A DNA stretch of 64,000 nt, taken from Paramoeba atlantica. Lineage: Eukaryota > Protista > Discosea. Position 1 is the first letter of the stretch, and every line of letters starts with the position of its first letter. Both the position numbers and the translations under genes were made by a program. The notes below the pieces were generated by a model. That model worked only from the letters and a program-made list of their open reading frames with translations. It ran no database searches and had not been told where the DNA came from. This document shows positions 5,753-60,282 of the stretch, one piece after another. Location of the stretch: positions 744,001 to 808,000 of the forward strand of contig CDRNVI010000040.1 of assembly GCA_977017575.1 (NCBI GenBank). The letters run 5' to 3'.

Positions 5753-7210
5753 TCATTTAATTTCTACATCTGCCATAACTACGCAATGTGTGGTTGGTGT
5801 CGGTGCCTTTAAAACTTTATGCGCACATAAACTAGAAGAGAACCGATCCCCAACTAAAATATGATCAAGTTGCCTCGTCACTCTATCTCCTTCATTTTTC
5901 CCTGACTTGAAATGGTCGCCTCCACTGATGGTTTCACTACTCTCTGCAACCTTTGATTTACAGTTATTGAACTTATCACTGGATCCCATCAAATCCAAAG
6001 ATGTATGGCTCTGAATTTTGATATCATCAGACGGTCTCTTTAAGCTTGATTTCCCACCTTTGAGCTCTACTCCTGTTTTCTTTCTGCAAGGAAGTGTGCA
6101 TGTCCATTTGCGTCGACTAGGGCATAGAGAATGTGCTGATTTGCATCCTATTGTTGCCATAAGACCTTTCAACTGGGAAACAGCCGGTGGGTCCATTTTC
6201 TTATTTGTTATTAAGGTAAGGGGTGCGTTGAAGCCCCCCATGACCAACAAAGGTCGTCGCCTCACCTTTGTGCCAACCTCACGGCACGCCTTTGCCACAT
6301 CCCCCAGAAAGGCCGCATGTGCGGTCTCTGAGGAGTCCCTCGTAGGGGCGTAAACATTAAATAGCATACCCTTCCCTCCCTCAAGGGAATATTCAGCTCC
6401 CATAACCCTTCCACTCACCTTCCACACATTTCCTAGTAACCTTCGGCTAACGATAGCCATGCCGTTGTATGAATCCACGCTTGTGGCAGACTGAAGGTAT
6501 ACATGAAACCTATGTCCCAAATATTCGACCTTCCTATAAATAATTCCATCCTCGTGAACATCCTTGGAAAATTTATACCTAGTTTCCTGTAAGCACATAA
6601 TGTCGGCCCCCTTTTCTATCATGAAAGAGAATACCTCACAAAGACGAGTGCATCTTCGAAAGGAAAACTCGTCTTCCCCCTCAAGTTTTAGTGTCGTCAC
6701 GTTCAGTGTGCTCACTGTCGTGTTTCTCCTCTCAGCGGAACCTCTAGGATTCTCCAATTGGCGTCGAGCATGCATGCCACGCAATGCCCGTGGTTTATGA
6801 GGGCTGTGACGGGCAGTTCTTCGGACCACTTTTTTAGGATGGCACACCTGCGCGGCACAGAGAACTACACCAGTAGAAGAAAAGGGGGGGAAATGGAGAG
6901 TTGTGTGCGGACGCTCCTCGTACCGCACGCGGAATGCACCTGAACGACTTTCCGAGGAAAGCAATTCAGGATGCACCCCTAAAACACTCCCCGACCAAAG
7001 ATAAAGTTTGCTACAGGTCTCGTATCTCCATACAACACGAAGCGTTGACCCCAAGCGAGTAGTCTTACAGACTGCGCGCACCGCCCGCTGGCGGAGTTTA
7101 GCAAGCTCTTTCCCGACCGGAGGAAGGAAAACAACTCCCCGAACACGCTTGGTCCGCAAAAGAGTTTCAACGGCCTCTGTCCCCTTCTGCGTGCCGGAAG
7201 CATCCGCCAT
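5753..7210 (-). CDS. N-terminal domain plus APE endonuclease of L-c
   Basis: Starts MADASG and carries APE motifs. GD is mutated to GG in VMGGFNA. Confidence 0.85.
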   Translation of the reverse strand: MADASGTQKGTEAVETLLRTKRVRGVVFLPPVGKELAKLRQRAVRAVCKTTRLGSTLRVVWRYETCSKLYLWSGSVLGVHPELLSSESRSGAFRVRYEERPHTTLHFPPFSSTGVVLCAAQVCHPKKVVRRTARHSPHKPRALRGMHARRQLENPRGSAERRNTTVSTLNVTTLKLEGEDEFSFRRCTRLCEVFSFMIEKGADIMCLQETRYKFSKDVHEDGIIYRKVEYLGHRFHVYLQSATSVDSYNGMAIVSRRLLGNVWKVSGRVMGAEYSLEGGKGMLFNVYAPTRDSSETAHAAFLGDVAKACREVGTKVRRRPLLVMGGFNAPLTLITNKKMDPPAVSQLKGLMATIGCKSAHSLCPSRRKWTCTLPCRKKTGVELKGGKSSLKRPSDDIKIQSHTSLDLMGSSDKFNNCKSKVAESSETISGGDHFKSGKNEGDRVTRQLDHILVGDRFSSSLCAHKVLKAPTPTTHCVVMADVEIK

Positions 7211-7227
7211 ATTTTTTATAAACGAAT

Positions 7228-8871: not shown

Positions 8872-9033
8872 GAAGACCTTTGTTTTTTTGAAGACCTTTG
8901 CTTTTTTGAAGACCTTTGCTTTTTTGAAGACCTTTGTTTTTTTGAAGACCTTTGCTTTTTTGAAGACCTTTGTTTTTTTGAAGACCTTTGTTTTTTTGAA
9001 GACCTTTGTTTTTTTGAAGACCTTTGTTTTTTT
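8872..9033 (+). repeat. 5'-terminal 18-bp array of L-d, (gaagacctttg[t/c]tttttt)x9
   Basis: Nine units, then the hairpin tttttgaa-tattc-ttcaaaaa and the ATG. Confidence 0.95.
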
Positions 9034-11526
9034 GAATATTCTTCAAAAACATGGCGAAGGCGTCCGGGCCTTGCGAGAATAGTATAGTGAATCTTCTAGT
9101 ACGGTCCACGTTAGGTCTGGGTGTCCTTTTTGAACCAACTTTGGATTTTGATGGACATGCTAAACTTCGCCTGCGTACTGTGATGAGTATATGTAAAATT
9201 CTTCGTCCTGGAGACTGCATCGCGCTGTGCTGGCGATATGCGGGGGCTGCGGAGTATCGGGTTTGTAGGGGGGATGTCACACATAGAGGTTATGGGTCTC
9301 TCTTTCAGCTAGGTCGCTGGCGGGTGAAATACTACCGGCGATCGGAAACGCTTCCTTTCCCGCCGTATGACCCACGTATAGTGCTGTGTGGGGTGCGAAT
9401 TCGGAAACCTCGACGTTCGAATACCCGAAAGAAAGTACGTAAAAATATGGCACTGTGTGGCAAGCATGCTCTTCGCGACAACGACCCTGAAGGGTCTGCT
9501 GTGAGGAAGTATTTATCTATAGGAACTCTTAACACGACTTCGTTGAAACTTAAGGGCGACGACGTTTTCAGACTGAAAGCATCCTCCCGATTCCATGAAA
9601 CATTGCGATATATGGCTCAGAAAGATTTGCATGTTCTGGCTTTAAAGTAAACAAGATTCTCTTTTACTTCTAGCGGTGGGTCTGACATTTTGCGCAGGCA
9701 ACTACGGTACGGAGATAAACACTTTTTCATCTACCTTTTGTCGGCGGTGAATGGGTACAACGGTATGGGGTTTATCTCTCAGCATCCGTTTTTGAAGGTT
9801 TGGAAGGTGAGTGACAGGATCATGGGGGCCGAGTTTACTATAGAAGGGGGGTCGGCCTTTATCATGAATGTATACGGGCCGACGCGCGATTTTTCACAAG
9901 ATGCAATGGAAGAGTTTGACATTTCTCTCACCACTGCGTTTCATGACGCAGTTGGTAAATATTCACGACGGCCAGCTCTTCTCCTTGGAGATTTGAATGC
10001 ACCGCTCACTTTTAAAAATAAGACGGAAGAGGACGCGCTATCAATGGAAAGATTAGAAGGCCTTTTAGAAGGAATAAATTCTAAATCGGGGCACACCTTA
10101 TGCCCAAGCCGCCGTAAATATACATGTATACTGCCGAACGATGCTAAGCGACAGCTCGATCACATTGCAGTTTGTTCGCGCTTTGCGTCTGCCCTACATA
10201 AACATCAAGTTTTTGGCGCACCAACACCAACTGTACACTTTCTGGTGAGAGCCGAGATCAAGATCAAATGGAAAGTTTCCACAAATACCCACAGAAATAA
10301 GATTCCCTGGCTTCAACTTTCTAACCCAGAATATAGTGAAAAATTTGACAAACGAATCTGCGATCATGTCAATGGCGAACTGCACAACAAGGATTTCCCT
10401 TCCTGGGATCTTCTTGCCTCTTGCCTTCGATCGTCTGGCATGGAAATTCCAAAACCACAAAACAAAATATCTCTTGAAATCCATTCGCCAATGGAAACGC
10501 TTGAAGGAGCCGAAACTGGTTATTTGCGCAGAATCTTTGAGCTAAGCAGAAAGCATAAGGACTTCAATGAATTGGTTTTACAAACACAGGTGCCAATAGA
10601 GGAAGCAATAGCCAAATCATGTGATGTCCTGGAAACTAAACTAAAGAAGAATCATGCCAGCCCATGGAGAGCTCTGAAAGAAATATGTGGATTTCATCGC
10701 GCCGATTTTAAGATTTCAGGGACCTGTAATAAACAAAAGCTGGCGGAAATCAAATCATTCTTCGAAGCCTTTGCGGGAGACGCCGGGGGGGACACGAATA
10801 TAAAATTTCCTGAGGCCAAACCATCCCCTAACACGATTAACGACTTCACTTTTACGGAAGAAGAGCTTCAAATTGGCATCTCACACTTTGGTATGGGAAA
10901 ATCGCCAGGCAAAGACGAAATACCAATGGAAGCCTTGAAATGCATAGCTGGTAACGAGTTACTTCGAGATTGGCTGCTATGTGTCATAAACAGAGTTCAC
11001 GATACCGGGATGGCTCCGGATGTTTGGGGTGATGTCTTAGAAGTTCCTATACCAAAAAAGGGTGATTTGGGTCTTCTTAAGAACTGGCGACCTATTTGCT
11101 TAGTGAATTGCATCGTCAAACTAATGAACAGTTTAATCTTGCAACGAATGAGACCTTATGTGGAGCCCGTGCTTCGCGAGAATCAATATGGGTTTCGACC
11201 AGATCGCTCAACAACTCAAGCCCAGGAGATTCTCAACGAAGCAAGAGTTAAAGCTTTGCGGGAAAATGGGCAACATTGGTTTCGTGGATTTTGCAAAGGC
11301 TTTTCCATCTGTTTCGTTTGATGCTATCAGGGCATCTCTGGTAGCATTCCACATTGGCCCCAAGTTAGTAGAAATGATTATGTCGGTCTATCGCAATATG
11401 AGAGGCGTCGTTCGTACACTGTACGGGCTAACGGAAGCTTTCCCCATCACGACAGGAATTCTACAGGGCGACGTTCTCGCACCGTACCTCTTTGTTATGG
11501 TCCTGGATCGAATATTATTTAAGGCA
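8872..11526 (+). mobile_element. Non-LTR retrotransposon L-d, 5' half (N-domain, APE, RT up to the QGD motif)
   Basis: ATG at 9051 (MAKASG), a stop at 9650, ORF 9690..11321 with APE motifs and WRPICLVN, a frameshift near 11270, and an end at DRILFKA where L-e begins. Confidence 0.92.
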
Positions 11527-11613
11527 AAAGATCAAGTTTTTTGTAAAGATCAAGTTTTTTGTAAAGATCAAGTTTTTTGTAAAGATCAAGTTTTTTGTAA
11601 ATTTATTTGCAAA

Positions 11614-14580
11614 ATGGCGGATGCTTCCGGTGCACGCATGCCCACTGCTATTATGAATCTTCTTGCGTGTTCCAAGCTTGATCGGGGGATTCTTTTCCGT
11701 CCTGCGAAGGGTGGAACGGAATGTGCTAAACTCCGCGCGAGGTCGTTAGGACGCATTATGCGACTGCTTTGTTTAGGCGCTAAGCTTGCGGTGGTTTGGA
11801 GGTACGCGGATTCATCGAACTACAGTGTTTGGGAGGGGGTAGTAGAGAGTTGGGTGCCGAGCCGCTGGCTTGTTCGCTACGCTCAGTGTTCGCGATTTAC
11901 GCTTCCGTTCCCTCCATGTAGTCCTCACATCGTCCTCTGTGCTGCTCGGGTTTGTGCGCCTAAGCGTAGACGTCGTTTCAAAAAGCGCTCTCGCAAATAC
12001 AGGGCACAGTCTGGCAAACGTGCTCTCCGTGACTTGGTGGGCCCTGGGGGCCCCGCTGTGAAGAGAATGTTGAGTGTGGGAACCTTGAACGTGACTACTC
12101 TTAAGCTGAAAGGTGAAGACGAGTTTAGCCTACGAAAGTGCGGACACCTTTGCGAAGTACTTGCCTTCATTGGTCTGAAGGGAATAAATATTCTGGGCCT
12201 GCAGGAAACGCGATTCAGATTCCCATCTTCTGAAAAGTCGGATGTCCTTCACCGCAAAGTACAATATCGGAACGCAGAGTTTCACTTGAACCTCATTCCA
12301 GCGCGCGCAAAGGATGCATACAATGGAATGGGATTCGTCAGCACTTTTCCCTTGTCTAAGGTATCTAAAACCAGTGAAAGGATTATGTCGGGTGAATTTG
12401 AGATGGAGGAAGGAGTCGCAACAGTTATTAACGTATATTCTCCTACACGCGATTCTAAGGACGTCGAGGTTACGGAGTTCTACGGAGAACTCGAACGTTG
12501 CTGCTTGAGAATAAGGGAAAGCAACCCGCGTCGCCCATTAATTGTGCTGGGCGACTTTAATGCACCTTTGACACATATAACAAATAAGGATCTAGATCCC
12601 ATTGCGGCCGCCCGTCTTAAAGGACTTTCTTGTTCTATAGACTGTAAGTCTGCGCACTGTCTTTGTCCAAGTAGTCGGAAATGGACATGCGAATTACCAA
12701 ACAAAACTTTAAGGCAGTTAGATCACATATTTATTTGTAGCAGATTTGCATCGGCAATTCAACGACACAAAGTGATCAAGGCACCCATTCCTACTACTCA
12801 CTGTTGTTTTATAGCCAGAATTAAAATTAAATGGCGAGTCAGTGATCCCAAAACGAATACGAATCAGCTCTCGTGGATTTCTTTTCGAAATAGTGAGGAT
12901 AGGAAGAATTTCATCAATAAAGTTCACGACCAATATCGAGCAACCTCGAACTCTTGTCGATCATGGAGCGCTCTCGCACAATATATGAAAAATGCTGTAA
13001 AAACTTTCAAAAAACCGACGAAACGAAATTTGAACAAAGAAGCTGTAAAGGACTCAAAAATACATGATTTGCGCGGTTTATATCACAAGAGCAGAAACAA
13101 AAAGGTGTTCAACGCTCTCGTAATGGAGAATAAAGCGGAAGTTGAAGAGATTATTTCCGACGAATGCTTGGAGATTGAAAAACAGCTTCGTAAAAACCAT
13201 TCAAACCCATGGAGAACGATTCGAAAGATATGCGGGCAATATCGTGATACCTTTAGCACGAACGGAAGCTCACGAAATGATAAACTTAACGAAATTCGAT
13301 CGTACTTCATGAAATTTAGTGGCGCTGATGATGGAGATCCAAATCTTAGCTTTGAACTGCTGCCGCCGCCGTTAGTACCAATATCCGATGCAGCATTTAC
13401 AAGCGAGGAGTTAAGCACATCTTTAGAACATTTCAGAAGAGGAAAAACACCGGGAAGTGACGGAATACCAATGGAAGCCCTTCAAGCTATAGCGGTCCAC
13501 CCTGATCTGAGATCGCATCTCCTGAATATAATCAACCAGGTACACGAAACGGGAGTCACAGAGGAAGCCTGGCGCAACACTCTTCAAATACCCATCCCAA
13601 AGAAAGGAGACCTCACTAACATTGAGAATTGGAGTCCTATACGCGTAGTAAATAGCGTAGTTAAGCTCATGAATCATATGATACTCTCCCGCATTAGACC
13701 CAACATTGAAAAGTCTCTTCGGGGTAACCAGTATGGGTTTCGACCTAACCGAGCGACTTCTGGAGCTCAGATTATCATGAACGAAATAAAAACCAAAGCA
13801 TTCAGAGGACAAGGCCTTTCTGTAGCTTTTATAGACTTTGCTAAAGCATTTCCTTCGGTATCGTTCGCTGCTATTAAAGCTAGTTTGCATGCATTTCGAG
13901 TAGGTCCATGTCTTTCTAAGATGATAATGTCTATATACGATGAGCTGAAAGGCACTGTACGAACTTCTATTGGAATCACAAAACCTTTCCCTATCACTAC
14001 AGGAATACTTCAAGGTGATGTATTGGCGCCTTATCTGTTCGTTATGGTGTTAGATAGAATTCTCAATAAAGCACTAGATGGAAAATCAGACGGGGTTCTT
14101 CTCAGCTCTAGGGGTACAAGAAAGCGGGGTCTTCATGAAAAGCGCCTGAGTGACATTGAGTATGCGGACGATATAGCGTTATTTAGTGACACGAAGAGTG
14201 GTTTGACAAATATGATAGACAATGTAGCTGAAGAGTCACGCAAAGCTAATCTGAAACTAGCCGTCGGAGCAAACAAGACAGCCTGGTTAACTTTTGGTAA
14301 ATCTCAAATGAGCAGCGAGAGCCTGAACAGCAAATTCTCGGGGATGATTCCGAAAGTTACGTCTTACAAACACTTAGGGCATCGGCAGGAAAATGATTTT
14401 ACATCTACAGTTAAAGATCGATTGAAACTAGCTTGGGGATCTCTCTTTCGAATGAATGGTATTTGGTCTTCACCACTTAGCCAGGAGACTAAGCTGCGCC
14501 TCTACGATTCAATAGTATCCGGTGCTAAACTTTGGGACAGGTGCACTTTCTATTTCAAAATCCATGCTCCGAAGAATTGA
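11614..14580 (+). CDS. L-e polyprotein: N-domain, APE, RT
   Basis: MADASG...GTLNVTTL, LQETR, NVYSP, LGDFNA, QLDHI, QYGFRP, FIDFAKAFPSV, GILQGDVLAPYLF, YADD. The track ORF 11158..14580 is an in-frame chimera with L-d. Confidence 0.92.
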   Translation: MADASGARMPTAIMNLLACSKLDRGILFRPAKGGTECAKLRARSLGRIMRLLCLGAKLAVVWRYADSSNYSVWEGVVESWVPSRWLVRYAQCSRFTLPFPPCSPHIVLCAARVCAPKRRRRFKKRSRKYRAQSGKRALRDLVGPGGPAVKRMLSVGTLNVTTLKLKGEDEFSLRKCGHLCEVLAFIGLKGINILGLQETRFRFPSSEKSDVLHRKVQYRNAEFHLNLIPARAKDAYNGMGFVSTFPLSKVSKTSERIMSGEFEMEEGVATVINVYSPTRDSKDVEVTEFYGELERCCLRIRESNPRRPLIVLGDFNAPLTHITNKDLDPIAAARLKGLSCSIDCKSAHCLCPSSRKWTCELPNKTLRQLDHIFICSRFASAIQRHKVIKAPIPTTHCCFIARIKIKWRVSDPKTNTNQLSWISFRNSEDRKNFINKVHDQYRATSNSCRSWSALAQYMKNAVKTFKKPTKRNLNKEAVKDSKIHDLRGLYHKSRNKKVFNALVMENKAEVEEIISDECLEIEKQLRKNHSNPWRTIRKICGQYRDTFSTNGSSRNDKLNEIRSYFMKFSGADDGDPNLSFELLPPPLVPISDAAFTSEELSTSLEHFRRGKTPGSDGIPMEALQAIAVHPDLRSHLLNIINQVHETGVTEEAWRNTLQIPIPKKGDLTNIENWSPIRVVNSVVKLMNHMILSRIRPNIEKSLRGNQYGFRPNRATSGAQIIMNEIKTKAFRGQGLSVAFIDFAKAFPSVSFAAIKASLHAFRVGPCLSKMIMSIYDELKGTVRTSIGITKPFPITTGILQGDVLAPYLFVMVLDRILNKALDGKSDGVLLSSRGTRKRGLHEKRLSDIEYADDIALFSDTKSGLTNMIDNVAEESRKANLKLAVGANKTAWLTFGKSQMSSESLNSKFSGMIPKVTSYKHLGHRQENDFTSTVKDRLKLAWGSLFRMNGIWSSPLSQETKLRLYDSIVSGAKLWDRCTFYFKIHAPKN

Positions 14581-15691
14581 CGTTGAAGTTAACAACATGA
14601 GAAGAATAGTTTGCCAATGCAACAGATTAGATGAATACGGAATGAGCTACCCGAATGCTTCTCTGTATCTTGAAACTGAGCGCTTTTCTACTATACACAA
14701 GGTTCAGAAGGCCAAGCTCGTCGGGCACATGCTGAGGCACTCCAGTGATTTTCAAGAGCTTGTACAGTGGAAACAACGCCCGAATGCACGCAATTTATCT
14801 CCAAGCGAGGCTTGCTTCAAGGATCTTAACATTACACTGGAAGAGGCATTGGTATTTGCGTCAGACCGTGAACACTGGTATCGTCTGACAGAAAAATTGC
14901 GACGTGAACTTGAACCGCTCATAGAATACGAAAAAATTAGGTCAGCAAGGTGGAAAACTGCTCTTGCCAAAGCTAAAAAACAAAAAAGTCCTTCAGAATT
15001 ACAGTTCGTTGAAGAATCAAATGTGCCTTTTCCAGCCTATAAAGCCATACAAATATATACAGATGGCTCTGTTCTGCCGATGAAAAATACGAAAGAGATT
15101 CGAAGTGGCATAGGTATCGTAGTTCTAAAACCACGATGCGAACCCTCACGGATATCCATACCATTGGAATCAGACACTATTGAGCGAGTAGAGATCTTAG
15201 CTTTTCAGCATGCCCTTCTCCAACTGCCGTCAAAACCATGCGCTTGTCTGTTTCATACAGACTCTTACTATCTATGGGACTTCTTTCACAATCTTCGATA
15301 TCGGCGGCGAATCGTTGGCTACAAGGGGGTTTTAAATGGAGATTTGTTCTCCCAGTTAGACGGAAAATTACGGTCCTTAAAACATGATTTGTACTCAATA
15401 TATATGTGCAAAGTCAAGGGTCACTCAGGAAATAAATGGAACGAGGAGGCAGATGGGTTAGCACTGATTGCAGCGCGAAAAGTTCCTCGACCGCCTGAGC
15501 AGAAAAAGAGAAAAACAAGTAATGATTCCAACGCATCACAAATCGACAAATCCTTGGAAAAGCTGATAAAACATAGAACCTTGGAAAAGGGAAAGACGAA
15601 AACCAATCCAGCACCCAAGCGCGGCGCCGAGGCTAAAGTCACTCTGTGCGGGAAGATTGCGAAAACTGGTGGGAAGAGGGCGCCTTCATAG
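14522..15691 (+). CDS. L-e C-terminus: RT thumb, RNase H, K/R-rich tail (frameshifted continuation)
   Basis: AKLVGHMLRH, YTDGS, VEILA, HTDSYYLW, KVKGHSGNKWNEEAD (full D-E-D-D set). Confidence 0.9.
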   Translation: MLNFGTGALSISKSMLRRIDVEVNNMRRIVCQCNRLDEYGMSYPNASLYLETERFSTIHKVQKAKLVGHMLRHSSDFQELVQWKQRPNARNLSPSEACFKDLNITLEEALVFASDREHWYRLTEKLRRELEPLIEYEKIRSARWKTALAKAKKQKSPSELQFVEESNVPFPAYKAIQIYTDGSVLPMKNTKEIRSGIGIVVLKPRCEPSRISIPLESDTIERVEILAFQHALLQLPSKPCACLFHTDSYYLWDFFHNLRYRRRIVGYKGVLNGDLFSQLDGKLRSLKHDLYSIYMCKVKGHSGNKWNEEADGLALIAARKVPRPPEQKKRKTSNDSNASQIDKSLEKLIKHRTLEKGKTKTNPAPKRGAEAKVTLCGKIAKTGGKRAPS

Positions 15692-15799
15692 TAAGAGTTG
15701 GGCGGAAGACGTGTTTCCACCAGCAGGTTCGGAATACCCTGAGGAAGAGTTCAGGAAGATAAAGGAAAAGTATTGTCTTTTTAAAGGAAAAGTATTAAA

Positions 15800-17400
15800 G
15801 GAAAATTGGATTGGATTGGGCGCGGCTCACTGATCTGAATTATGCTGACGATTTGCTCCTATTTGGGAGCGACAAGGAAGACTCATTTTTCATTCTCCTT
15901 CTGAAGCCTGCATGGGCGATATGGGGATCATGGTTGAACAAGCATTGGTCTAGGGAAAGAATCATACTGCATACGGATTCCTGGATAGTTTGGCATTTTG
16001 CAAATGTGATTAGAAAAAAGTATTATTTGATTGATTTTGAAGGCCTTCCAAATAGCGATATATATTTGGATCTGGAACACGCTTTTCGAGGCTTAGAAGC
16101 GCGTAGTGTGCAGCTTTTTGTTTTTAAGGTGAAAGGTCACTGCGGAAATTTCTTTTTTAGGCTCTTCGTTAAACGCGGTGGTTGCTTTCAACTTAGAAGT
16201 CACTCATGCTGCGCGCTTCGCGTTGAAAACTACCGCCGCGTTTAACGAAGAGCCTAAAAAAGAAAATTTAGCCTGGAAAACGGAAAGATTATAGCCAAAA
16301 ATAGCCGAATTTCGGGTACAAATGGGGTCATTTTCGCATATTTTTGCTCTCAGAGCACTAAATCCGACATTTGCGCGTGGCAAATCACTCGGAGGCATGA
16401 ATGGAAGCCTACCGAACGTATTGGGTAGAGAATGCGACTCCAACCATACCATTCTGTCGACACAAAAATGCCCCTTTAGGTCCGAAAAATACTTTTTCAC
16501 CTTTTTTAGTCAAAAATGGGTCATTTTGGGGGGCGCACCACAGTTTGAAGAAGTGATACCTTGCGAAAACAACTGCGTAGAAAGCTAGTGTAGGTCCCAA
16601 ACTATCAAAATACAATAGGGGAAACGATTTTGGAAAAATAGTTTTTTTGTCATTTTTTTCGCCAAGTTGAAATTTTTTTCAAAAAAAATTTTCCGAAAAA
16701 ATCCGAACTTGGCGGACCCGTCCTGCCGATACGCGGGGGGGTCACCCCCGGGTAGGGGGGTGGAAAATGCGCGCCAAGACCCCGGCTACCCGTTCTGCGG
16801 TTTTTTTTCGAAAACTAATTTTTTCGAAAAAATTTGCTCGACCATGCCCCCCCCCCCTGGACCCCCCCCCTGGACCCCCCCCCTGGACCCCCCCCATGGA
16901 CCCCCCCCATGGACCCCCCATTTTTTTCAAATTTTTTTTTCAGTTTTGGACCACCGGAGCCCCCTTTTATATTTTTTTCTTCTATTATATTACTGTGTTC
17001 CTCTTTATATTTTCACTGTTTTTGTTCACTTTTTTTTCAATAATCGAGTGTAGAGCGGTAGTTTTACAACCACCGCAATATTTACAACGATAAGTGCGAT
17101 TTAATAGCCAAAGCAGCTCTTTCGCGCAACTCTTCGAAGAAAAAGCGCAAAACCTCCGCCGCGACAAGCGAAGGTCAAAATTCTGATCTCCTTTCCGAGC
17201 CTGGCATGCCAGAGGTAGCAAGGACCCCTAACACCAGTGCCAATCGCCGCCGCGGTAGTCTACGTGACGGGAATCAAACAGCCCAAACAAAGCGTCGCCC
17301 CCGCTAGAAACCACGAAATGCGGCCACCTACCAGGGCAAGAGAACCGTGAGCTTTATGCAGTGAGGAATGTATTGGGGGGAAATTTCCACTTGAAAAATA
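15800..17400 (+). pseudogene. Internally deleted LINE remnant (YADD joined to RNase H), split by R1
   Basis: NYADDLLL, HTDSWIVW and KVKGHCGN lie before R1. The frame resumes as IYNDKCDLIAKAA at 17080. Confidence 0.8.
16150..17079 (+). mobile_element. R1: ~930-bp non-autonomous element with a long 5' fold-back, a short 3' hairpin and no TSD
   Basis: Hairpin 16147-16269 (aggctcttcgttaaacgcgg...ccgcgtttaacgaagagcct) and 3' end gcggtagttttacaaccaccgcaat. Removing it restores the RNase H frame. Confidence 0.88.
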
Positions 17401-17440
17401 AGTTGTTCGAAAGTGATATGAGGAAATTTAAGAATGAATA

Positions 17441-17642
17441 CCCAGATTGAAAGGGGCGAGGGAGATACGAAGCAACAGGCGTGGAAGATTACCACTGAAA
17501 AGAAATGGTATCTCCCTGCACGAAGTTTGTCTCCGAGCTAGCAAGCGCAAAGGCTTTTCTCGTGCGGGGAGATACCATTTCTTTTCAGTGGTAATCTGCC
17601 ACGCCTGTTGCTTCGTATCTCCCTCGCCCCTTTCAATCTGGG
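17441..17642. mobile_element. MITE M2 (202 bp, ~76-bp TIRs)
   Basis: cccagattgaaaggggcgagggagatacg... and its reverse complement, with one mismatch. Other copies at 49577 and 60286. Confidence 0.9.
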
Positions 17643-17848
17643 TTATACGGAGGGCCGTTCGAGGCGGTGCAGACCCGCTGGCGCGGGTGGTGCTTTACCT
17701 CGTGACAAGTGATCTTGAAGGAAACAAGCTTCTGAAATCTTTTTTTTGAGGGGCCCGCCCGGCTAACATTTTGCCTCTGGGAGGTCTATGTTCGATTCTA
17801 CTTACGTCTTGTTTATGTTAAGCATTGAGCCCCTTATGTTGTACTTTA

Positions 17849-18278
17849 GGGCGGTGCGAGTGTAGTTGGTAGACGGTGGGCCTTACAACCTGCAGGTTGT
17901 TGGTTCGATTCCCGCTATCGACAAAACTCGTTACCTGGCGGCCTCACTAAAAAGGGAAAGCGATCAGGAGTGCCTTCAAGGCCCACACCCAACCCCGCTC
18001 CCCTGGAGGACCGACCCTGAACCGTCGAGCTGAACCAGGCTCCAGCGCAGCCGCTAAATTGCGAGCTGCCTACGCAAAGGAGGCTTGAAACACAGCCTAC
18101 ACGATGCAACGGGGTGGACGCCCGTCCTGGTAGCTACGGTTTGGTAGCCGTGCTCTGGCAGCAAGGCGTCGAGTGCCGTCTTGGAAGGGGGTAGCAAGAC
18201 GATGAAGGTCGGTCACCTGAGACTCTACCCTAACGGTTGGCGCTGCAGAGCCCTCTGTGTCTGTGTGTCTGTGTCTTC
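17849..18278 (+). mobile_element. SINE-A, full length, tRNA-derived head (Val-TAC-like)
   Basis: A box tgtagttggtag, loop cttacaa, B box ggttcgattcc. 12-bp TSD tgttgtacttta at 17837-17848 and 18279-18290. Confidence 0.9.
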
Positions 18279-33900: not shown

Positions 33901-35734
33901 TAGCGGAAAATCTTGCTTCTTGTCCCCTACAATTTTTCGAATTGTTCTGTACGCGGATTTTGGAGTTGATTTAAGCTCTTTTTCCAGGGCGTCGCACTCA
34001 TTTATAATAGAGGAGTCTAGTTTTTCAGAGAATTCTTTTGATGCAGTAGCAAACATAGTTTTATTGCCCACGATCTTCAGCAGAGACTTCATGACAAATC
34101 CGGATAGATCTGTTTCAGCATCAATGCGAATTTCTTTTGCGTTACTAGTTTTATTGGGAAGACTAGATGCGGACACTCTAACAGCAGAAGAGAGTCTTGT
34201 CCAAGATATTTCGCTGGCCTTATCTATTTCCATTTTTGGCGCGTTTTCGGACTTCTCATCCTCCGACCGAATTCTTTTTGGCACAGATTTTAATGATTCC
34301 TTTACTTTCGAAACAAACTTATTTCGGATTTCATCATTTTTCAATGCCTCCCAAAAAGGCTTTTGTTGAGACAGTTTTTGATTTTTCCATCGAAAATTGA
34401 AGTTCGATGTCAAAGCACAATGTCTGGTAGGTATGGGTGCGATGTGGCATTTTGTGGATCGTATAGAAGAGAAAAACCTTTTGTTATCAACGATGTGGTC
34501 AAGTTGCTTGGTCATTCCCTCTGGATGCCGACGAGTTTTAGGAAACCTATACGTCCATTTTCTTCTTGCACAACAGCCTTCATGCACAGATTGAGCTCCA
34601 AGCGAGCATAGTAGCTTTCGTAACTGTTTTGCACGCTTTGTATAACATTTCCTCCCCCCTGGGTTTAGTAGCGGCGAATTTAGATCTCCACTAATGATTC
34701 TTACCATACCATCATCTTCATAACATGCATCGAATAAGTCTTCGTCAAAACTTTGTTGCGTCGATTTGTTAGCTTTCGCTGTAGGTGAATAGACGTTGTA
34801 AATGCAGGCTTTCGTTTCACCTAGAATGAAGTGTCCACTCATAATGCGATCGCTAATCTTCTGAACAGATAGAGGTTTAGTGCTCAAAAATGCCATGCCA
34901 TTGTACCCGTTGATTGCACTCATCAGGTAGAGGTGAAGTGAGATGCCGTTTAAAAAGAGCTGCCTATGTAAAATAGAATCCTTATCATCAAATTTTAACC
35001 TTGTTTCCTGAAGCGCCATGATGTCAACATGTTGACTCCTCATGAGACCTGCCACTTGATATAGTCTAATCGACTTCCGAAGCGTGAAAGTATCAGTCGC
35101 TTTGACTTTCAAGGTGTCCACTTTTAGGGTACTTATCGTAAAACCCCCTCTCTTAGCATTCTTCTCGGATCCCTGACCCCGGTAGCCACTTCGAGGACAG
35201 TTGGTGCGTTTCCTATTTCGTTTGGATTTCCATTTTCCCAAGAAACCTACCCTACCACCCAGAATTTGAACTCGTTCATCTTTCGGAGGAAACAGGAAAA
35301 GGCGATCATCCACTAAATCATACTTCACTAGACGTCTACCGTCCGGAAGCATAGATTTAACAGTCCCCTCCCACAACCTCGTACGTAAATCATATGACAT
35401 ACTCCAGGCAACAGCAGAGCGTTTTCCAGGAGACAAAAGACATGACATTCGAAACAGGTCCCGCGGCCGGAGTTTGGCTACTCCCCATTTCCGCTTTTTA
35501 GGTAGAAACAGGTTTCCCCGACAACACGTGGCCAATCGGAGTTTTTCTTTGACCGCCAAGAAACCCCAAAAGGTCCGGACGCCTCCGCCAAATTATTATT
35601 AATTGCCATTAATAAAAATTGTTATCTTAATAAAAATTGTTATCTTAATAAAAATTGTTATCTTAATAAAAATTGTTATCTTAATAAAAATTGTTATCTT
35701 AATAAAAATTGTTATCTTAATAAAAATTGTTATC
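30981..35734 (-). mobile_element. Near full-length non-LTR retrotransposon L-f with a (GGTT)n 3' tail
   Basis: ORFs 33169..35559 (N-domain, APE, RT start), 32504..33229 and 31852..32568 (RNase H: YTDGA, HTDSEY, KVKAHNEN). The RT core is deleted. 5' array at 35610-35734. Confidence 0.92.
35610..35734 (-). repeat. 5'-terminal 18-bp array of L-f, (taagataacaatttttat)x7
   Basis: Followed by the hairpin tattaat-ggca-attaata and TTG-GCG-GAG-GCG-TCC-GGA. Confidence 0.93.
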
Positions 35735-45215: not shown

Positions 45216-46240
45216 GTTCCCATGTACTGTCTTCCTTTTTCCGTGCAGCGGAAAAAACTAGTTCTTGGAATTCTTTTTCTTTTTTTGGTCCCCGAAACAT
45301 GGCCAGATTACGCCACAGCTTCCCTTTTTGTTCTCGCATTTTCATTTGATCTTCAAATTTACAATCACAGCACAATGTGTAGTTGATATCGGTGATTTAA
45401 GAACCCTATGTCTACTTATGCTTGAAGAAAAACGCTCAATCACTAATACACGATCAAGTGGCCTGCATATGTTTTTGCCTTTTCCCTTCTTGGGCAATGC
45501 GCACGTTTTGCAAAAAAAAAATTGTGCATTTTTTTTTTCCGGCTGGGGCAGAGGGAGTGTGCTGATCTACATCCAATGGAGCAGAGAAGGCCTCTCATTC
45601 TCGATACCGCCGGTAAATCCATGCGATAATTTGATACCATTGCTAATGGTGCATTAGAGTCGCCCATAGGAATTGTTGGTCGCCGACGACCTTTTGCACT
45701 AACCTTCTTCCACGCATGTTCAAGGTCCCCCAAGGACTCCGCATGAGCGGTCTTCGAGGAATCTCTCATTGGCGTAGACGTTAATTAAGGTACCAGTCCA
45801 TTGCTCTAGGGAGCATTGTGCTCTCATCACTCTGGGGCAAGAGGCATAGGGGGGGAAAGGTAATGTCTCTGACGGTCGCTCCTCATATCTCACCCTCGTA
45901 GGCAAACCCTATGTAAAATAGACTTGCAAACAAAGAAACACATTCTCACTAGTGAAGTGCCTCCATACCACATGGAGCCGAGATCCGACTCTAACTAACT
46001 TTATCAGTGCTCGCGCCGCCTTCTGGCGAAGTTTAGCAGGTCCTCTCCGCTGCGGTGGGCGAAAAAGAACCCCTCGAACACGCTTGGTTCGTGTAAGAGT
46101 TTCAAGGAGCTCTGTCCCCTTACACGCGCCGGCAGCATTCGCAATATTTTTATAATCATATTATAAAAATCGTGTTCTTATAAAAATGGTGTTCTTATCA
46201 AAATGGTGTTCTTATCAAAATGTTCTTATAAAAATGGTGT
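45216..46240 (-). mobile_element. LINE L-i 5' remnant (N-domain, deleted APE) with a 17-bp 5' array
   Basis: ATT-GCG-AAT-GCT-GCC-GGC start, homology to L-c 6750-7210, and (aagaacaccatttttat)n at 46160-46240. Confidence 0.85.
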
Positions 46241-59989: not shown

Positions 59990-60282
59990 CTTTGCAGGAT
60001 TGTGCTTCTTGTGCGGCATGCGCCCCGCACCTAAGAACATATTCTCACTAGTGAAGTACCTCCATACCACATGGAGCCGAGATCCGACTCTAACTGACTT
60101 TATCAGTGCTCGCGTCACCCTCTGGCGAAGTTTAGCAGGTCCTCTCCGCTGTGGTGGGCGAAAAAGAACCCCCCGAGCACGCTTGGTTCGTGTAAGAGTT
60201 TCAAACATCTCTGTCTCCTTACACGCGCCGGAAGCATTCGCAATATTTTTATAATCATATTATAAAAATGGTGTTCTTATAG
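59990..60282 (-). mobile_element. LINE L-j 5' remnant (L-i subfamily)
   Basis: Matches 45945-46185. It has one array unit, the hairpin tttttataat-atg-attataaaaa and an ATT start. Confidence 0.85.

What the first reader, a model, noticed from the sequence alone, without database searches (positions are those of the whole stretch)
11614..15691. Single-ORF LINE family with an unrecognised N-terminal domain, an RTE-like RT and an RNase H
Seen: a ~130-aa domain precedes APE in all subfamilies. Its conserved pattern is GxLFxP...AKLRxR...GxxxxVxWRY...WxGxV...VxY...TLPFPP...VL, followed by a basic linker. Established: RTE-clade elements have a single APE-RT ORF and normally lack RNase H, whereas Ingi and I-group elements carry RNase H. 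Here the RT and thumb motifs (GILQGDVLAPYLF, AKLVGHMLRH) look RTE-like by eye, yet an intact D-E-D-D RNase H follows and there is no zinc knuckle. Inference: the W..WxGxV..VxY..FPP spacing resembles a Tudor/SH3-like barrel that could read chromatin or RNA. This may be a new clade.
Basis: partly seen in the sequence, partly recalled or inferred. Interest (0 to 1): 0.75.

Follow-up and report, generated by a model that had tools for sequence, protein, structure and literature searches.

The report
RTE-type LINE with Tudor-like domain
This is a nearly intact copy of a young, abundant jumping gene of the RTE type that carries two extra modules, an RNase H and an N-terminal barrel resembling the Spindlin/Tudor readers of histone marks. 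I found no description of this combination, and it suggests the element may choose its landing sites by reading chromatin.

Summary
Window 11527-15819 (+) is one copy of a LINE whose intact sisters encode a single 1359-aa protein: N-domain (aa 1-115), basic linker, AP endonuclease, reverse transcriptase, RNase H with D-E-D-H-D, and no zinc knuckle. The window copy is broken once, by a 2-bp deletion after 14515.

The genome holds at least 150 N-domain copies in 12 or more subfamilies. About 45 lie in open frames of 1340 aa or more.

In RT trees the family is monophyletic (100/100). It nests inside RNase H-less, roughly 1000-aa APE-RT elements of RTE type. Joining it to other RNase H-bearing LINEs is rejected (AU p = 2e-5).

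The N-domain has no Pfam or PDB sequence match. Across 1.84 billion proteins it has 35 relatives, and all those long enough to judge are LINE proteins. Its barrel (aa 53-115) is under purifying selection. Two models and language-model features point to Spin/Ssty-type Tudor repeats.

Three things are new here:
- The first 41 codons overlap a covarying Y-shaped RNA structure.
- Elements start with 17-18-bp tandem arrays of 4 to more than 235 units.
- All six young copies checked sit inside other repeats.

The scan had already noted the RTE-like plus RNase H lineage elsewhere in this genome (s1-377419, s1-403737, s1-403829). Placement among Repbase clades and the barrel's ligand remain untested.

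The parts
11527..11601 (+). 5' tandem array, 4.2 units of AAAGATCAAGTTTTTTGT; a truncated remnant of an array that has 17 to more than 235 units in sister copies
   Evidence: TRF; array lies inside the target-site duplication in L013; copy numbers
11602..11613 (+). Short unique leader between the array and the ATG
   Evidence: Alignment of eight copies
11616..11737 (+). Conserved Y-shaped RNA structure (three helices, 33 pairs) that starts at the G of the start codon and overlaps codons 1-41
   Evidence: RNAalifold and pair counts: 87% of cells paired against 74-75% shuffled and 35-50% slid; 20 pairs with compensatory change. The covariance model hit covers 11612-11749. dS is low in codons 1-52
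11614..11769 (+). N-domain head (aa 1-52): MADASG start, helix, short strand, AKLR helix
   Evidence: Alignments A1 and A2; AF2 model with pLDDT 44-76 in this part
11770..11958 (+). N-domain barrel (aa 53-115): five-strand Spin/Ssty-like Tudor barrel with invariant W62, W73, G75 and Y89, and F99 in PFPP
   Evidence: AF2 pLDDT 85-91; fold searches; ESM features; hhalign to the tandem barrels, 98.1%; pN/pS 0.26-0.54
11959..12093 (+). Basic linker (aa 116-160); candidate nuclear-localisation or nucleic-acid-binding stretch
   Evidence: Sequence; function inferred
12094..12813 (+). AP endonuclease (aa about 161-400)
   Evidence: Pfam PF03372 and PF14529
13594..14379 (+). Reverse transcriptase (aa 661-922)
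   Evidence: Pfam RVT_1, E = 1.8e-25; RT trees
14515..14516 (+). Site of the 2-bp deletion (TA missing after 14515), the only frameshift of this copy
   Evidence: Alignment to three intact copies
15041..15466 (+). RNase H domain, D-E-D-H-D with basic protrusion
   Evidence: Pfam RNase_H, E = 2.2e-16; alignment to RNase HI; genome scan places it at C40:759041-759466
15467..15691 (+). Basic C-terminal tail and stop codon; no zinc knuckle
   Evidence: Translations
15692..15805 (+). 3' UTR, shortened by 55-bp and 25-bp deletions relative to intact copies
15806..15819 (+). 3' tail of TTGGA repeats, with no poly(A)
9049..11526 (+). 5' part of an older copy of another subfamily (N-domain, APE, RT up to ...DRILFKA) into which this element inserted
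15820..16140 (+). Continuation of the older copy's RT (...RLTDLNYADD...). About 22 codons are missing at the junction and no clear target-site duplication is seen
   Evidence: Sequence compared with the intact RT; the size of the gap is my estimate

Best explanation
What is shown.
- This is a young, probably still active family of APE-type non-LTR retrotransposons whose RT belongs to the RTE-type radiation.
- A full-length element has, in order: a 5' array of 17-18-bp units, a 1359-aa ORF, a 3' UTR of about 210 bp and a TTGGA-repeat tail.
- It is flanked by target-site duplications of 8-12 bp, which fits target-primed reverse transcription.
- The lineage added a C-terminal RNase H of the cellular/bacterial HI type to an ancestor that lacked one.
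- It also carries an N-terminal small beta-barrel homologous to the tandem barrels of RNase H-less sister LINEs.

What is inferred.
- The RNase H removes the RNA from the cDNA hybrid, so that second-strand synthesis does not depend on the host.
- The barrel is a Spin/Ssty-like Tudor module that binds a methylated histone tail through the invariant aromatic residues W62, W73, Y89 and F99. This would tether the RNP to repeat-rich, silenced chromatin.
- The basic linker serves nuclear import or nucleic-acid binding.
For: Architecture and intact copies.

Abundance and youth: at least 150 N-domain matches, about 45 of them in open frames of 1340 aa or more. Intact copies are 99.4-99.8% identical to each other.

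Element ends: target-site duplications CTTTGCGCCT and GGATATCC; simple-repeat tails.

RT placement: the family is monophyletic at 100/100 and nested at 100/98, 95/94 and 100/100 inside RNase H-less RTE-type proteins. The AU test rejects a clade with the other RNase H-bearing LINEs, p = 2.3e-5. DUF6451 traces sit just after the RT.

Barrel: only 35 relatives among 1.84 billion representatives, and every one long enough to judge is a LINE ORF. hhalign to the tandem barrels gives 98.1%. Purifying selection, pN/pS 0.26-0.54. Spindlins are the only Foldseek hits at E <= 1e-3 for the tandem model. Spindlin-4 has the top VIA Z of 5.9. The top ESM feature hit is Spin/Ssty at 0.89, followed by other Tudor families. 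The spacing of the four invariant aromatic residues resembles the Spindlin1 cages W62/W72/Y91/Y98 and F141/W151/Y170/Y177 (PMC3967050).

Chromatin theme: one relative has a C-terminal PHD finger at 23.3 bits. Six of six young copies lie inside other repeats.
Against: No curated Repbase references were available. 'RTE type' therefore rests on proxies: DUF6451, CFDP2-named proteins, and the length and architecture of the neighbours.

No N-domain passes the Pfam Spin-Ssty threshold: 0 of 13 single barrels, and 1 of 9 tandem forms at E = 0.0015.

The single-barrel model gives no Foldseek hit better than E = 0.1. VIA Z values of 4.7-5.9 tie Spindlin with KOW, CPH, bL19 and Sm-like barrels, so geometry alone shows only an SH3-like barrel.

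I had no residue-level superposition of the aromatic residues.

Nesting in repeats could reflect selection against genic insertions or sheer repeat density rather than targeting. The genome's repeat fraction is unknown to me.
Confidence: 0.7

Rival explanations
1. The N-terminal barrel is a nucleic-acid-binding or chaperone module (Sm-, KOW- or OB-like use of an SH3-type barrel) that, with the basic linker, replaces the missing ORF1 protein and packages the element's RNA. It does not read chromatin.
For: VIA Z scores tie Spindlin with KOW (Spt5), bL19, LSm/Hfq, RimP and WYL barrels. There is a sub-threshold KOW6 Pfam hit in P0135. An adjacent, strongly basic linker follows the barrel. RTE-type elements lack an RRM-type ORF1 (my own knowledge).
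Against: Foldseek, which uses 3Di plus amino acids, puts only Spindlins at E <= 1e-3. All ten best ESM family hits lie in one Tudor clan. The invariant residues are aromatic (W, W, Y, F) rather than basic.
Confidence: 0.25
2. The family is a divergent member of an RNase H-bearing clade (Ingi, I or Tad1 group). RNase H is then ancestral, and the RTE-like look of the RT is an artefact of sampling.
For: The RNase H sits C-terminal to the RT, as in the I group. The host uses spliced leaders according to earlier notes, and Ingi elements live in kinetoplastids (my own knowledge). The tree holds no curated references.
Against: After the family itself, the best hits to the RT region are RNase H-less proteins of about 1000 aa at E = 1e-64 to 1e-30. 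The first outside protein with RNase H appears at E = 2e-12. The split has 100/99 support and the AU test gives p = 2.3e-5. Sister lineages with the same barrel lack RNase H. There is no zinc finger and no poly(A) tail.
Confidence: 0.05
3. The conserved N-terminal 'domain' is conserved mainly for an RNA function (the structure at the ORF start), and the peptide itself has little function.
For: dS is low (0.43-0.69) and pN/pS high (0.55-0.95) in codons 1-52. A covarying 33-pair structure spans codons 1-41.
Against: This holds only for the head. The barrel (codons 53-115) lies outside the RNA structure. It has saturated dS with pN/pS 0.26-0.54, folds with pLDDT 85-91, and has protein-level homologues in lineages with quite different DNA.
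Confidence: 0.1

Closest known systems
RTE-group LINEs (RTE-1, BovB, RTEX, Proto2 types)
   Same: A single ORF with APE followed by RT. RT and post-RT (DUF6451) region are the nearest by search and by tree. The 3' tail is made of short simple repeats rather than poly(A). No zinc knuckle.
   Different: The protein is about 360 aa longer. It has an N-terminal barrel domain plus basic linker, a C-terminal RNase H, and a 5' UTR made of a long array of 17-18-bp units. An ordinary RNase H-less, barrel-less RTE-type element also lives in this genome (L042).
Ingi/L1Tc and other I-group LINEs
   Same: A single long ORF with APE, RT and then RNase H. L1Tc has a conserved, functional RNA/DNA element at its very 5' end, Pr77 (my own knowledge).
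   Different: The RT does not group with the RNase H-bearing LINEs sampled. There is no C-terminal zinc finger and no poly(A) tail. No HDV-like or other Rfam ribozyme hit at the 5' end.
Plant L1 and oomycete Utopia (independent RNase H captures)
   Same: Precedent for a LINE lineage that gains RNase H secondarily (PMC4640811).
   Different: Those carry the 'archaeal-like' form with R in place of H, and in Utopia it sits upstream of the RT. Here the domain keeps H, sits downstream of the RT and is closest to E. coli-type RNase HI among solved structures.
Spindlin (Spin/Ssty Tudor-like repeats)
   Same: A five-strand Tudor-like barrel, often in tandem, with four aromatic residues at similar spacing. 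Spindlins are the top Foldseek and ESM matches.
   Different: Not a sequence-level member: below the Pfam cut-off. It is fused to a retrotransposon enzyme. The ligand is unknown.
Chromoviruses (Ty3/gypsy integrase with chromodomain)
   Same: A retroelement enzyme fused to a 'royal family' reader that steers integration to marked chromatin (Gao et al. 2008, as cited in PMC3597677).
   Different: Those are LTR elements with integrase and a chromodomain at the C-terminus. Here it is a LINE with a Tudor-like barrel at the N-terminus, and targeting is not shown.

Membership tests
RTE group of non-LTR retrotransposons | One ORF with an N-terminal AP endonuclease followed by RT | tested here: met
   Pfam order is APE then RT in intact 1359-aa ORFs, with an extra domain in front of the APE.
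RTE group of non-LTR retrotransposons | RT groups with RTE-type elements in phylogeny | tested here: met
   Nested at 100/100 and 95/94 among DUF6451-positive proteins of about 1000 aa and CFDP2-named proteins; split 100/99 from the other groups. These are proxies, not curated references.
RTE group of non-LTR retrotransposons | Placement in one of the Repbase clades RTE, RTEX, RTETP or Proto2 | not testable with these tools
   No Repbase or RTclass1 sequences were on hand.
RTE group of non-LTR retrotransposons | No RNase H domain | tested here: not met
   PF00075 at 56-62 bits in every subfamily.
RTE group of non-LTR retrotransposons | DUF6451 motif directly after RVT_1 | tested here: inconclusive
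   14-24 bits in family ORFs, cut-off 28. Some RNase H-linked genomic copies reach 29.7 bits in the six-frame scan.
RTE group of non-LTR retrotransposons | 3' end of short tandem repeats, no poly(A) | tested here: met
   Tails of (TTGGA)n, (GTTG)n and (TTG)n.
I group / Ingi clade | RT clusters with RNase H-bearing LINEs | tested here: not met
   AU p = 2.3e-5 against a clade with P0095 and P0114. No curated Ingi or I reference was included.
I group / Ingi clade | C-terminal zinc finger and poly(A) tail (Ingi/L1Tc; my own knowledge) | tested here: not met
   Basic tails without Cys/His motifs; simple-repeat tails.
Spin/Ssty (PF02513), Tudor 'royal family' | Match to the Pfam model over its cut-off | tested here: not met
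   0 of 13 single barrels; 1 of 9 tandem forms at E = 0.0015 and 18.8 bits.
Spin/Ssty (PF02513), Tudor 'royal family' | Four core strands plus one extra strand forming a Tudor-like barrel | tested here: met
   AF2 strands at 57-64, 70-81, 84-89, 96-99 and 106-114. Spindlins give E = 6.6e-5 by Foldseek and Z = 5.9 by VIA for the tandem model.
Spin/Ssty (PF02513), Tudor 'royal family' | Aromatic cage of four residues | tested here: inconclusive
   W62, W73 and Y89 are invariant and F99 nearly so. Their spacing is like the Spindlin1 cages. No residue-level superposition was possible.
Spin/Ssty (PF02513), Tudor 'royal family' | Binds methyl-lysine or methyl-arginine | not testable with these tools
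   Needs peptide-binding assays.
RNase H type 1 (PF00075) | Catalytic D-E-D-H-D and basic protrusion | tested here: met
   Aligned residue by residue to RNase HI; Pfam at 56-61 bits.

The most novel reading that the evidence does not exclude
An undescribed lineage of RTE-type LINEs, present in this protist and in unnamed organisms behind metagenome and transcriptome contigs, fuses a Spindlin-like methyl-mark reader to the LINE enzyme. Integration is then guided by chromatin state, which would be the LINE counterpart of chromovirus chromodomains. The same lineage captured RNase H independently. It also evolved two unusual cis elements: a covarying RNA structure that begins at the start codon, and a long array of 18-bp monomers at the 5' end that would let 5'-truncated copies stay complete.
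Probability: 0.35. Interest if true: 0.8.

Novelty: new variant of a known kind. Interest (0 to 1): 0.6.

Why it matters
LINEs are usually thought to choose targets through their endonuclease or through DNA-binding motifs. A Tudor-type reader fused to an APE-RT protein, kept under selection in dozens of intact copies and shared with sister lineages, would make chromatin-guided LINE integration directly testable.

The family also adds an independent RNase H gain inside a group described as lacking it. That bears on the long-running question of how often retroelements acquire RNase H.

The start-codon RNA structure and the monomer array are candidate cis-acting elements for translation or transcription in an organism that trans-splices its mRNAs.

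Tried and rejected
N-domain against sequence libraries: Pfam on every N-domain and the A2 profile against PDB sequences gave nothing meaningful; the best hit was RAD54B at E = 1.1.

RNase H origin:
- The RNase H domain alone, in the word search, returned only three fragments of the same family, so no close cellular donor turned up.
- The RNase H1 hybrid-binding domain PF01693 was not found in the genome, so the host's own RNase H1 could not be located for comparison.
- All 150 listed PF00075 matches are LINE-borne.

Spin-Ssty Pfam scan of the genome: nothing, and nothing in the 14 control genomes either, so this result is uninformative.

Known RNA families: the Rfam E-value scan of 9000-18000 found no HDV-like, twister or hammerhead motif at the element's 5' end.

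RNA structure stability: the thermodynamic z-score is only -0.46. Support for the structure comes from covariation alone.

The organisms behind the metagenome relatives, and the host's own name, remain unknown to me.

Spliced-leader relic: I looked for one at the 5' junctions of two copies and saw none.

N-domain-less variant: an apparently N-domain-less RNase H-bearing copy (L043) proved to be 5'-truncated.

Not done: an RNase H phylogeny against cellular and other LINE RNase H domains, for lack of reference sequences.


Full report
**What is in the window.** On the + strand, two overlapping open frames, 11158-14580 and 14522-15691, carry the finding. From the ATG at 11614 they encode 988 aa and, in the second frame, a further 389 aa. 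Pfam finds Exo_endo_phos (aa 181-378) and RVT_1 (661-922) on the first piece and RNase_H on the second. It finds nothing on the first 160 residues, even at E = 0.1.

The same genome (G000, 45.7 Mb in 248 contigs) holds intact sister copies with one 1359-aa ORF: L013:1182-5258, L014 and L015. Aligned to three of them, the window copy is 98.7-98.9% identical. It differs by one 2-bp deletion after 14515, which causes the frameshift, and by two deletions in the 3' UTR. The intact copies are 99.4-99.8% identical to each other. The family is single-ORF, but this copy is freshly broken.

**Element limits.** Every copy of this subfamily has a tandem array of the 18-bp unit AAAGATCAAGTTTTTTGT directly upstream of the ATG. 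In L013 the array has 55 units. The sequence CTTTGCGCCT lies just before the array and again just after the (TTGGA)4 tail. The array is therefore part of the element, and the 10-bp repeat is a target-site duplication. A second copy, on contig C43, shows GGATATCC at both ends.

The window copy keeps only 4.2 units (11527-11601) and ends with TTGGA repeats at 15819. It sits inside the RT gene of an older copy of another subfamily:
- Upstream, the older copy runs from 9049 and its reading frame stops at ...DRILFKA.
- Downstream, from 15820, it resumes at ...RLTDLNYADD.
- By my estimate about 22 codons are lost at the junction, and there is no clear duplication.

**Abundance and diversity.** A six-frame search with the first 135 residues finds at least 150 matches at 28-100% identity. 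About 45 of them lie in open frames of 1340 aa or more. Six are inside this 64-kb window. I extracted intact ORFs of 12 subfamilies, 1353-1533 aa long. All have the same order of parts: N-domain, basic linker, APE, RT, RNase H. Their C-terminal tails are basic and hold no Cys/His motif.

**The N-domain as protein.** Across 13 representatives, the invariant residues are G6, R24, F28, K39, L40, R41, W62, W73, G75 and Y89. PFPP at 98-101 is nearly invariant. The domain ends near residue 115, and a basic stretch of about 45 residues leads to the APE start (TLNVTTL).

Sequence searches:
- No member matches any Pfam family, and the profile matches no PDB sequence.
- A profile search of 1.84 billion representative proteins returns only 35 hits at E <= 1e-3.
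- Every hit long enough to judge is a LINE protein.

The hits are of two kinds. The closer ones have the same N-domain-APE-RT-RNase H layout. The more distant ones (P0142, P0145, P0149, P0032) have two barrels in tandem, then APE and RT, and no RNase H. Profile-profile comparison links the single and tandem forms at 98.1% probability, E = 1.2e-13.

**Fold.** AlphaFold2 on the 13-row alignment gives pLDDT 79 and pTM 0.70. The model has a helix, a short strand and a helix, followed by five strands at residues 57-114 with pLDDT 85-91.
- For this single-barrel model, Foldseek against the PDB gives nothing below E = 0.1, although Spindlin1 rows carry probability 0.9-0.97.
- The VIA search gives Z of at most 5.3, with Spindlin-4 at 4.7 among many SH3-like barrels.

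A second, independent model of a tandem-barrel protein (P0150, nine rows) is confident for the second barrel (pLDDT 88-94).
- Here Foldseek returns 27 hits at E <= 1e-3, all of them Spindlin-1, -2B, -3 or -4 (best 6.6e-5, 16-23% identity). The next family is a tandem Agenet domain at E = 0.014.
- VIA ranks Spindlin-4 first (Z 5.9, rmsd 2.7 over 62 residues), but this ties with bL19, HERC2 CPH, Spt5 KOW and RDM15 Tudor.

Other lines of evidence:
- ESM feature search of the N-domain puts a Spin/Ssty cluster first (0.89, 174 shared features), then PTM/DIR17 Tudor and KDM3B Tudor.
- One tandem protein has a sub-threshold Spin-Ssty Pfam hit at E = 0.0015.
- Spindlin1's two methyl-mark pockets are formed by W62/W72/Y91/Y98 and F141/W151/Y170/Y177 (PMC3967050). 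The invariant aromatics here, W62/W73/Y89/F99, have a similar order and spacing. I could not superpose them residue by residue.

My reading: an SH3-like barrel is secure, a Spin/Ssty-type Tudor module is probable, and membership of the Pfam family is not met.

**Selection, and an overlapping RNA element.** I compared subfamily pairs by Nei-Gojobori counts.

| Region | pN/pS | dS |
|---|---|---|
| Barrel (codons 53-115) | 0.26-0.54 | saturated |
| RNase H | 0.28-0.57 | saturated |
| APE and RT | 0.18-0.36 | saturated |
| Head (codons 1-52) | 0.55-0.95 in five of six pairs | 0.43-0.69 |

The low dS of the head, when the rest of the ORF is saturated, led me to fold the region. RNAalifold on nine subfamilies predicts a Y-shaped structure of 33 pairs. 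An outer helix joins GGCGGA, which starts at the G of the ATG, to the codons for K39-L40-R41, and it encloses two hairpins.

Pair counts support the structure:
- 86.9% of cells are paired, against 73.7 ± 1.5% in shuffles and 35-50% when partners are slid.
- 20 pairs show changes on both sides, against 10.4 ± 2.0 in shuffles.
- No shuffle out of 500 reaches the observed value on any of the five measures.

A covariance model built from these rows finds the element at all six N-domain starts in the window and in every subfamily locus. It finds none in the RNase H-less RTE-type element L042. On 27 distinct sequences the numbers hold: 87.2% paired, against 75.5% in shuffles and 38-49% slid. That alignment is fitted to the model, which favours the structure. 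The single-sequence fold reproduces the shape, but its energy is ordinary, z = -0.46. Rfam has no match there.

AKLRxR) is therefore constrained at least partly at the RNA level. The barrel lies outside the structure.

**RT affinity.** With the RT-thumb region as query, the word-indexed search gives three tiers of hits:
- Family members at 37-59% identity, all with RNase H where they are complete.
- Proteins of about 1000 aa with APE and RT, some with DUF6451, at about 30% identity over 98% of the query (E = 1e-64 to 1e-30).
- The first outside protein with RNase H, at E = 2e-12.

One tier-two protein, P0027, has named relatives in Brachionus, Branchiostoma, Strongylocentrotus and other animals, and relatives called 'Craniofacial development protein 2'. 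From my own knowledge, that name derives from the BovB/RTE endonuclease fused into bovine CFDP2.

Trees:
- A 120-row tree and a 70-row tree with ultrafast bootstrap and SH-aLRT agree.
- The family is monophyletic at 100/100.
- It lies in a clade (100/98) with the tandem-barrel RNase H-less LINEs and some barrel-less ones.
- That clade is nested (95/94, then 100/100) among the RTE-type proteins.
- The whole RTE-type side is split 100/99 from two other LINE groups and the zf-RVT outgroup.
- Forcing the family together with the two outside RNase H-bearing proteins costs 135.9 log-likelihood units, AU p = 2.3e-5.

The DUF6451 motif recurs right after RVT_1 in family ORFs at 14-24 bits, against a cut-off of 28. 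It exceeds the cut-off in some RNase H-linked copies in the genome scan. The genome also holds a plain RTE-type element with neither barrel nor RNase H (L042).

Limits of this evidence: rows were drawn from hits to my own queries, no curated clade references were available, and the position among RTE, RTEX, RTETP and Proto2 is open.

**RNase H.** The domain aligns along its whole length to E. coli-type RNase HI (E = 4e-8). D, E, D, H and D are in place and the basic protrusion is present. A published survey lists RNase H in the I group, plant L1, Proto1 and Dualen, not in the RTE group (PMC4640811). My literature searches found no RTE-type element with RNase H and no LINE with a Tudor-type domain. 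The library is incomplete, so this is weak evidence of absence.

Because barrel-bearing sister lineages lack RNase H, the simplest order of events is barrel first and RNase H later. The inner nodes that would fix this order are weakly supported (63/23). I could not identify a donor.

**Chromatin hints.**
- One family relative (P0009) ends in a PHD finger (23.3 bits, cut-off 24). Another (P0007) ends in a C2H2-like motif, which I read by eye.
- The basal member P0016 carries a barrel-like segment at its C-terminus.
- All six young copies whose flanks I examined lie inside other repeats. Two sit in RT genes of other retroelements. Four sit in sequences present 15 to more than 125 times in the genome.

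These points fit a reader that tethers the element to silenced, repeat-rich chromatin. They also fit selection against genic insertions.

**The 5' arrays.** Ten of twelve subfamilies have a 17-18-bp array directly upstream of the ATG. The units are subfamily-specific and share a core like TTAAGAC[CA]..CTTTTT. Among copies that are about 99.5% identical elsewhere, the number of units is 4, 17, 45, 55, at least 86, at least 204 and at least 235 (more than 4.1 kb). Some arrays are built wholly of a 17-bp variant.

The most economical explanation is ordinary 5' truncation within a very long array of the source copy. The array would then act like the promoter monomers of mouse L1 (my own knowledge), or as a spacer that spares the ORF from truncation. 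This is inference.

**Verdict.** The feature is a real, young and abundant LINE family of RTE type with a domain set I could not find described. I rate it a new variant of a known kind.

The RTE-like plus RNase H lineage had already been noted by this scan on other DNA of the same genome (s1-377419, s1-403737, s1-403829).
- The evidence on the N-terminal barrel.
- The sister lineages with tandem barrels.
- The RT tree.
- The RNA structure at the ORF start.
- The anatomy of the element's ends.

Noticed in passing
window 11616-11737 (+); also at 9049-9183 (+), 7078-7212 (-), 35454-35593 (-), 46013-46147 (-), 60112-60246 (-): A Y-shaped RNA structure of about 122 nt (33 pairs) starts at the G of the LINE's start codon and overlaps codons 1-41. 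Twenty pairs show compensatory changes. There is no Rfam match, and it occurs in every subfamily of this family.
   Followed up: partly
window 11527-11601; L013:181-1169; G000 C18, C41, C43, C63, C83 copies: The elements begin with tandem arrays of subfamily-specific 17-18-bp units that lie inside the target-site duplication. Copy number ranges from 4 to more than 235 among near-identical copies, and some arrays use a 17-bp variant throughout.
   Followed up: partly
window 9049-11526 and 15820-16140; L013:5483-6499; flanks of the C18, C41, C43, C63 copies: All six young copies examined are inserted inside other repeats. Two are in RT genes of other retroelements; the window copy shows a target deletion of about 22 codons instead of a duplication.
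   Followed up: partly
proteins P0009, P0007, P0016 (metagenome relatives): Relatives of the family carry further modules. P0009 has a C-terminal PHD finger (23.3 bits). P0007 has a C2H2-like motif (read by eye). P0016 has a barrel-like segment after the RNase H.
   Followed up: partly
L042:4036-7530 (-) = G000 C66: The same genome holds an ordinary RTE-type element (1165 aa; APE, RT, DUF6451 at 29.5 bits) with no RNase H, no N-barrel and no start-codon RNA structure.
   Followed up: partly
L021 and L022 flanks; L042 locus: Arrays of the 17-18-bp units also occur in inverted orientation and downstream of elements, so arrays of different elements often lie side by side. Whether arrays attract insertions was not tested.
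   Followed up: no
window 16136-16279: A long hairpin gives weak plant-miRNA-like Rfam hits on both strands (E = 5e-5 to 6e-4, far below the gathering scores). It lies in the fold-back element noted earlier as s1-389822.
   Followed up: no
L018:98-1100 (+): In this copy, the roughly 300 residues of open frame upstream of the ATG belong to another element and give a faint LsmAD hit (E = 0.12).
   Followed up: no
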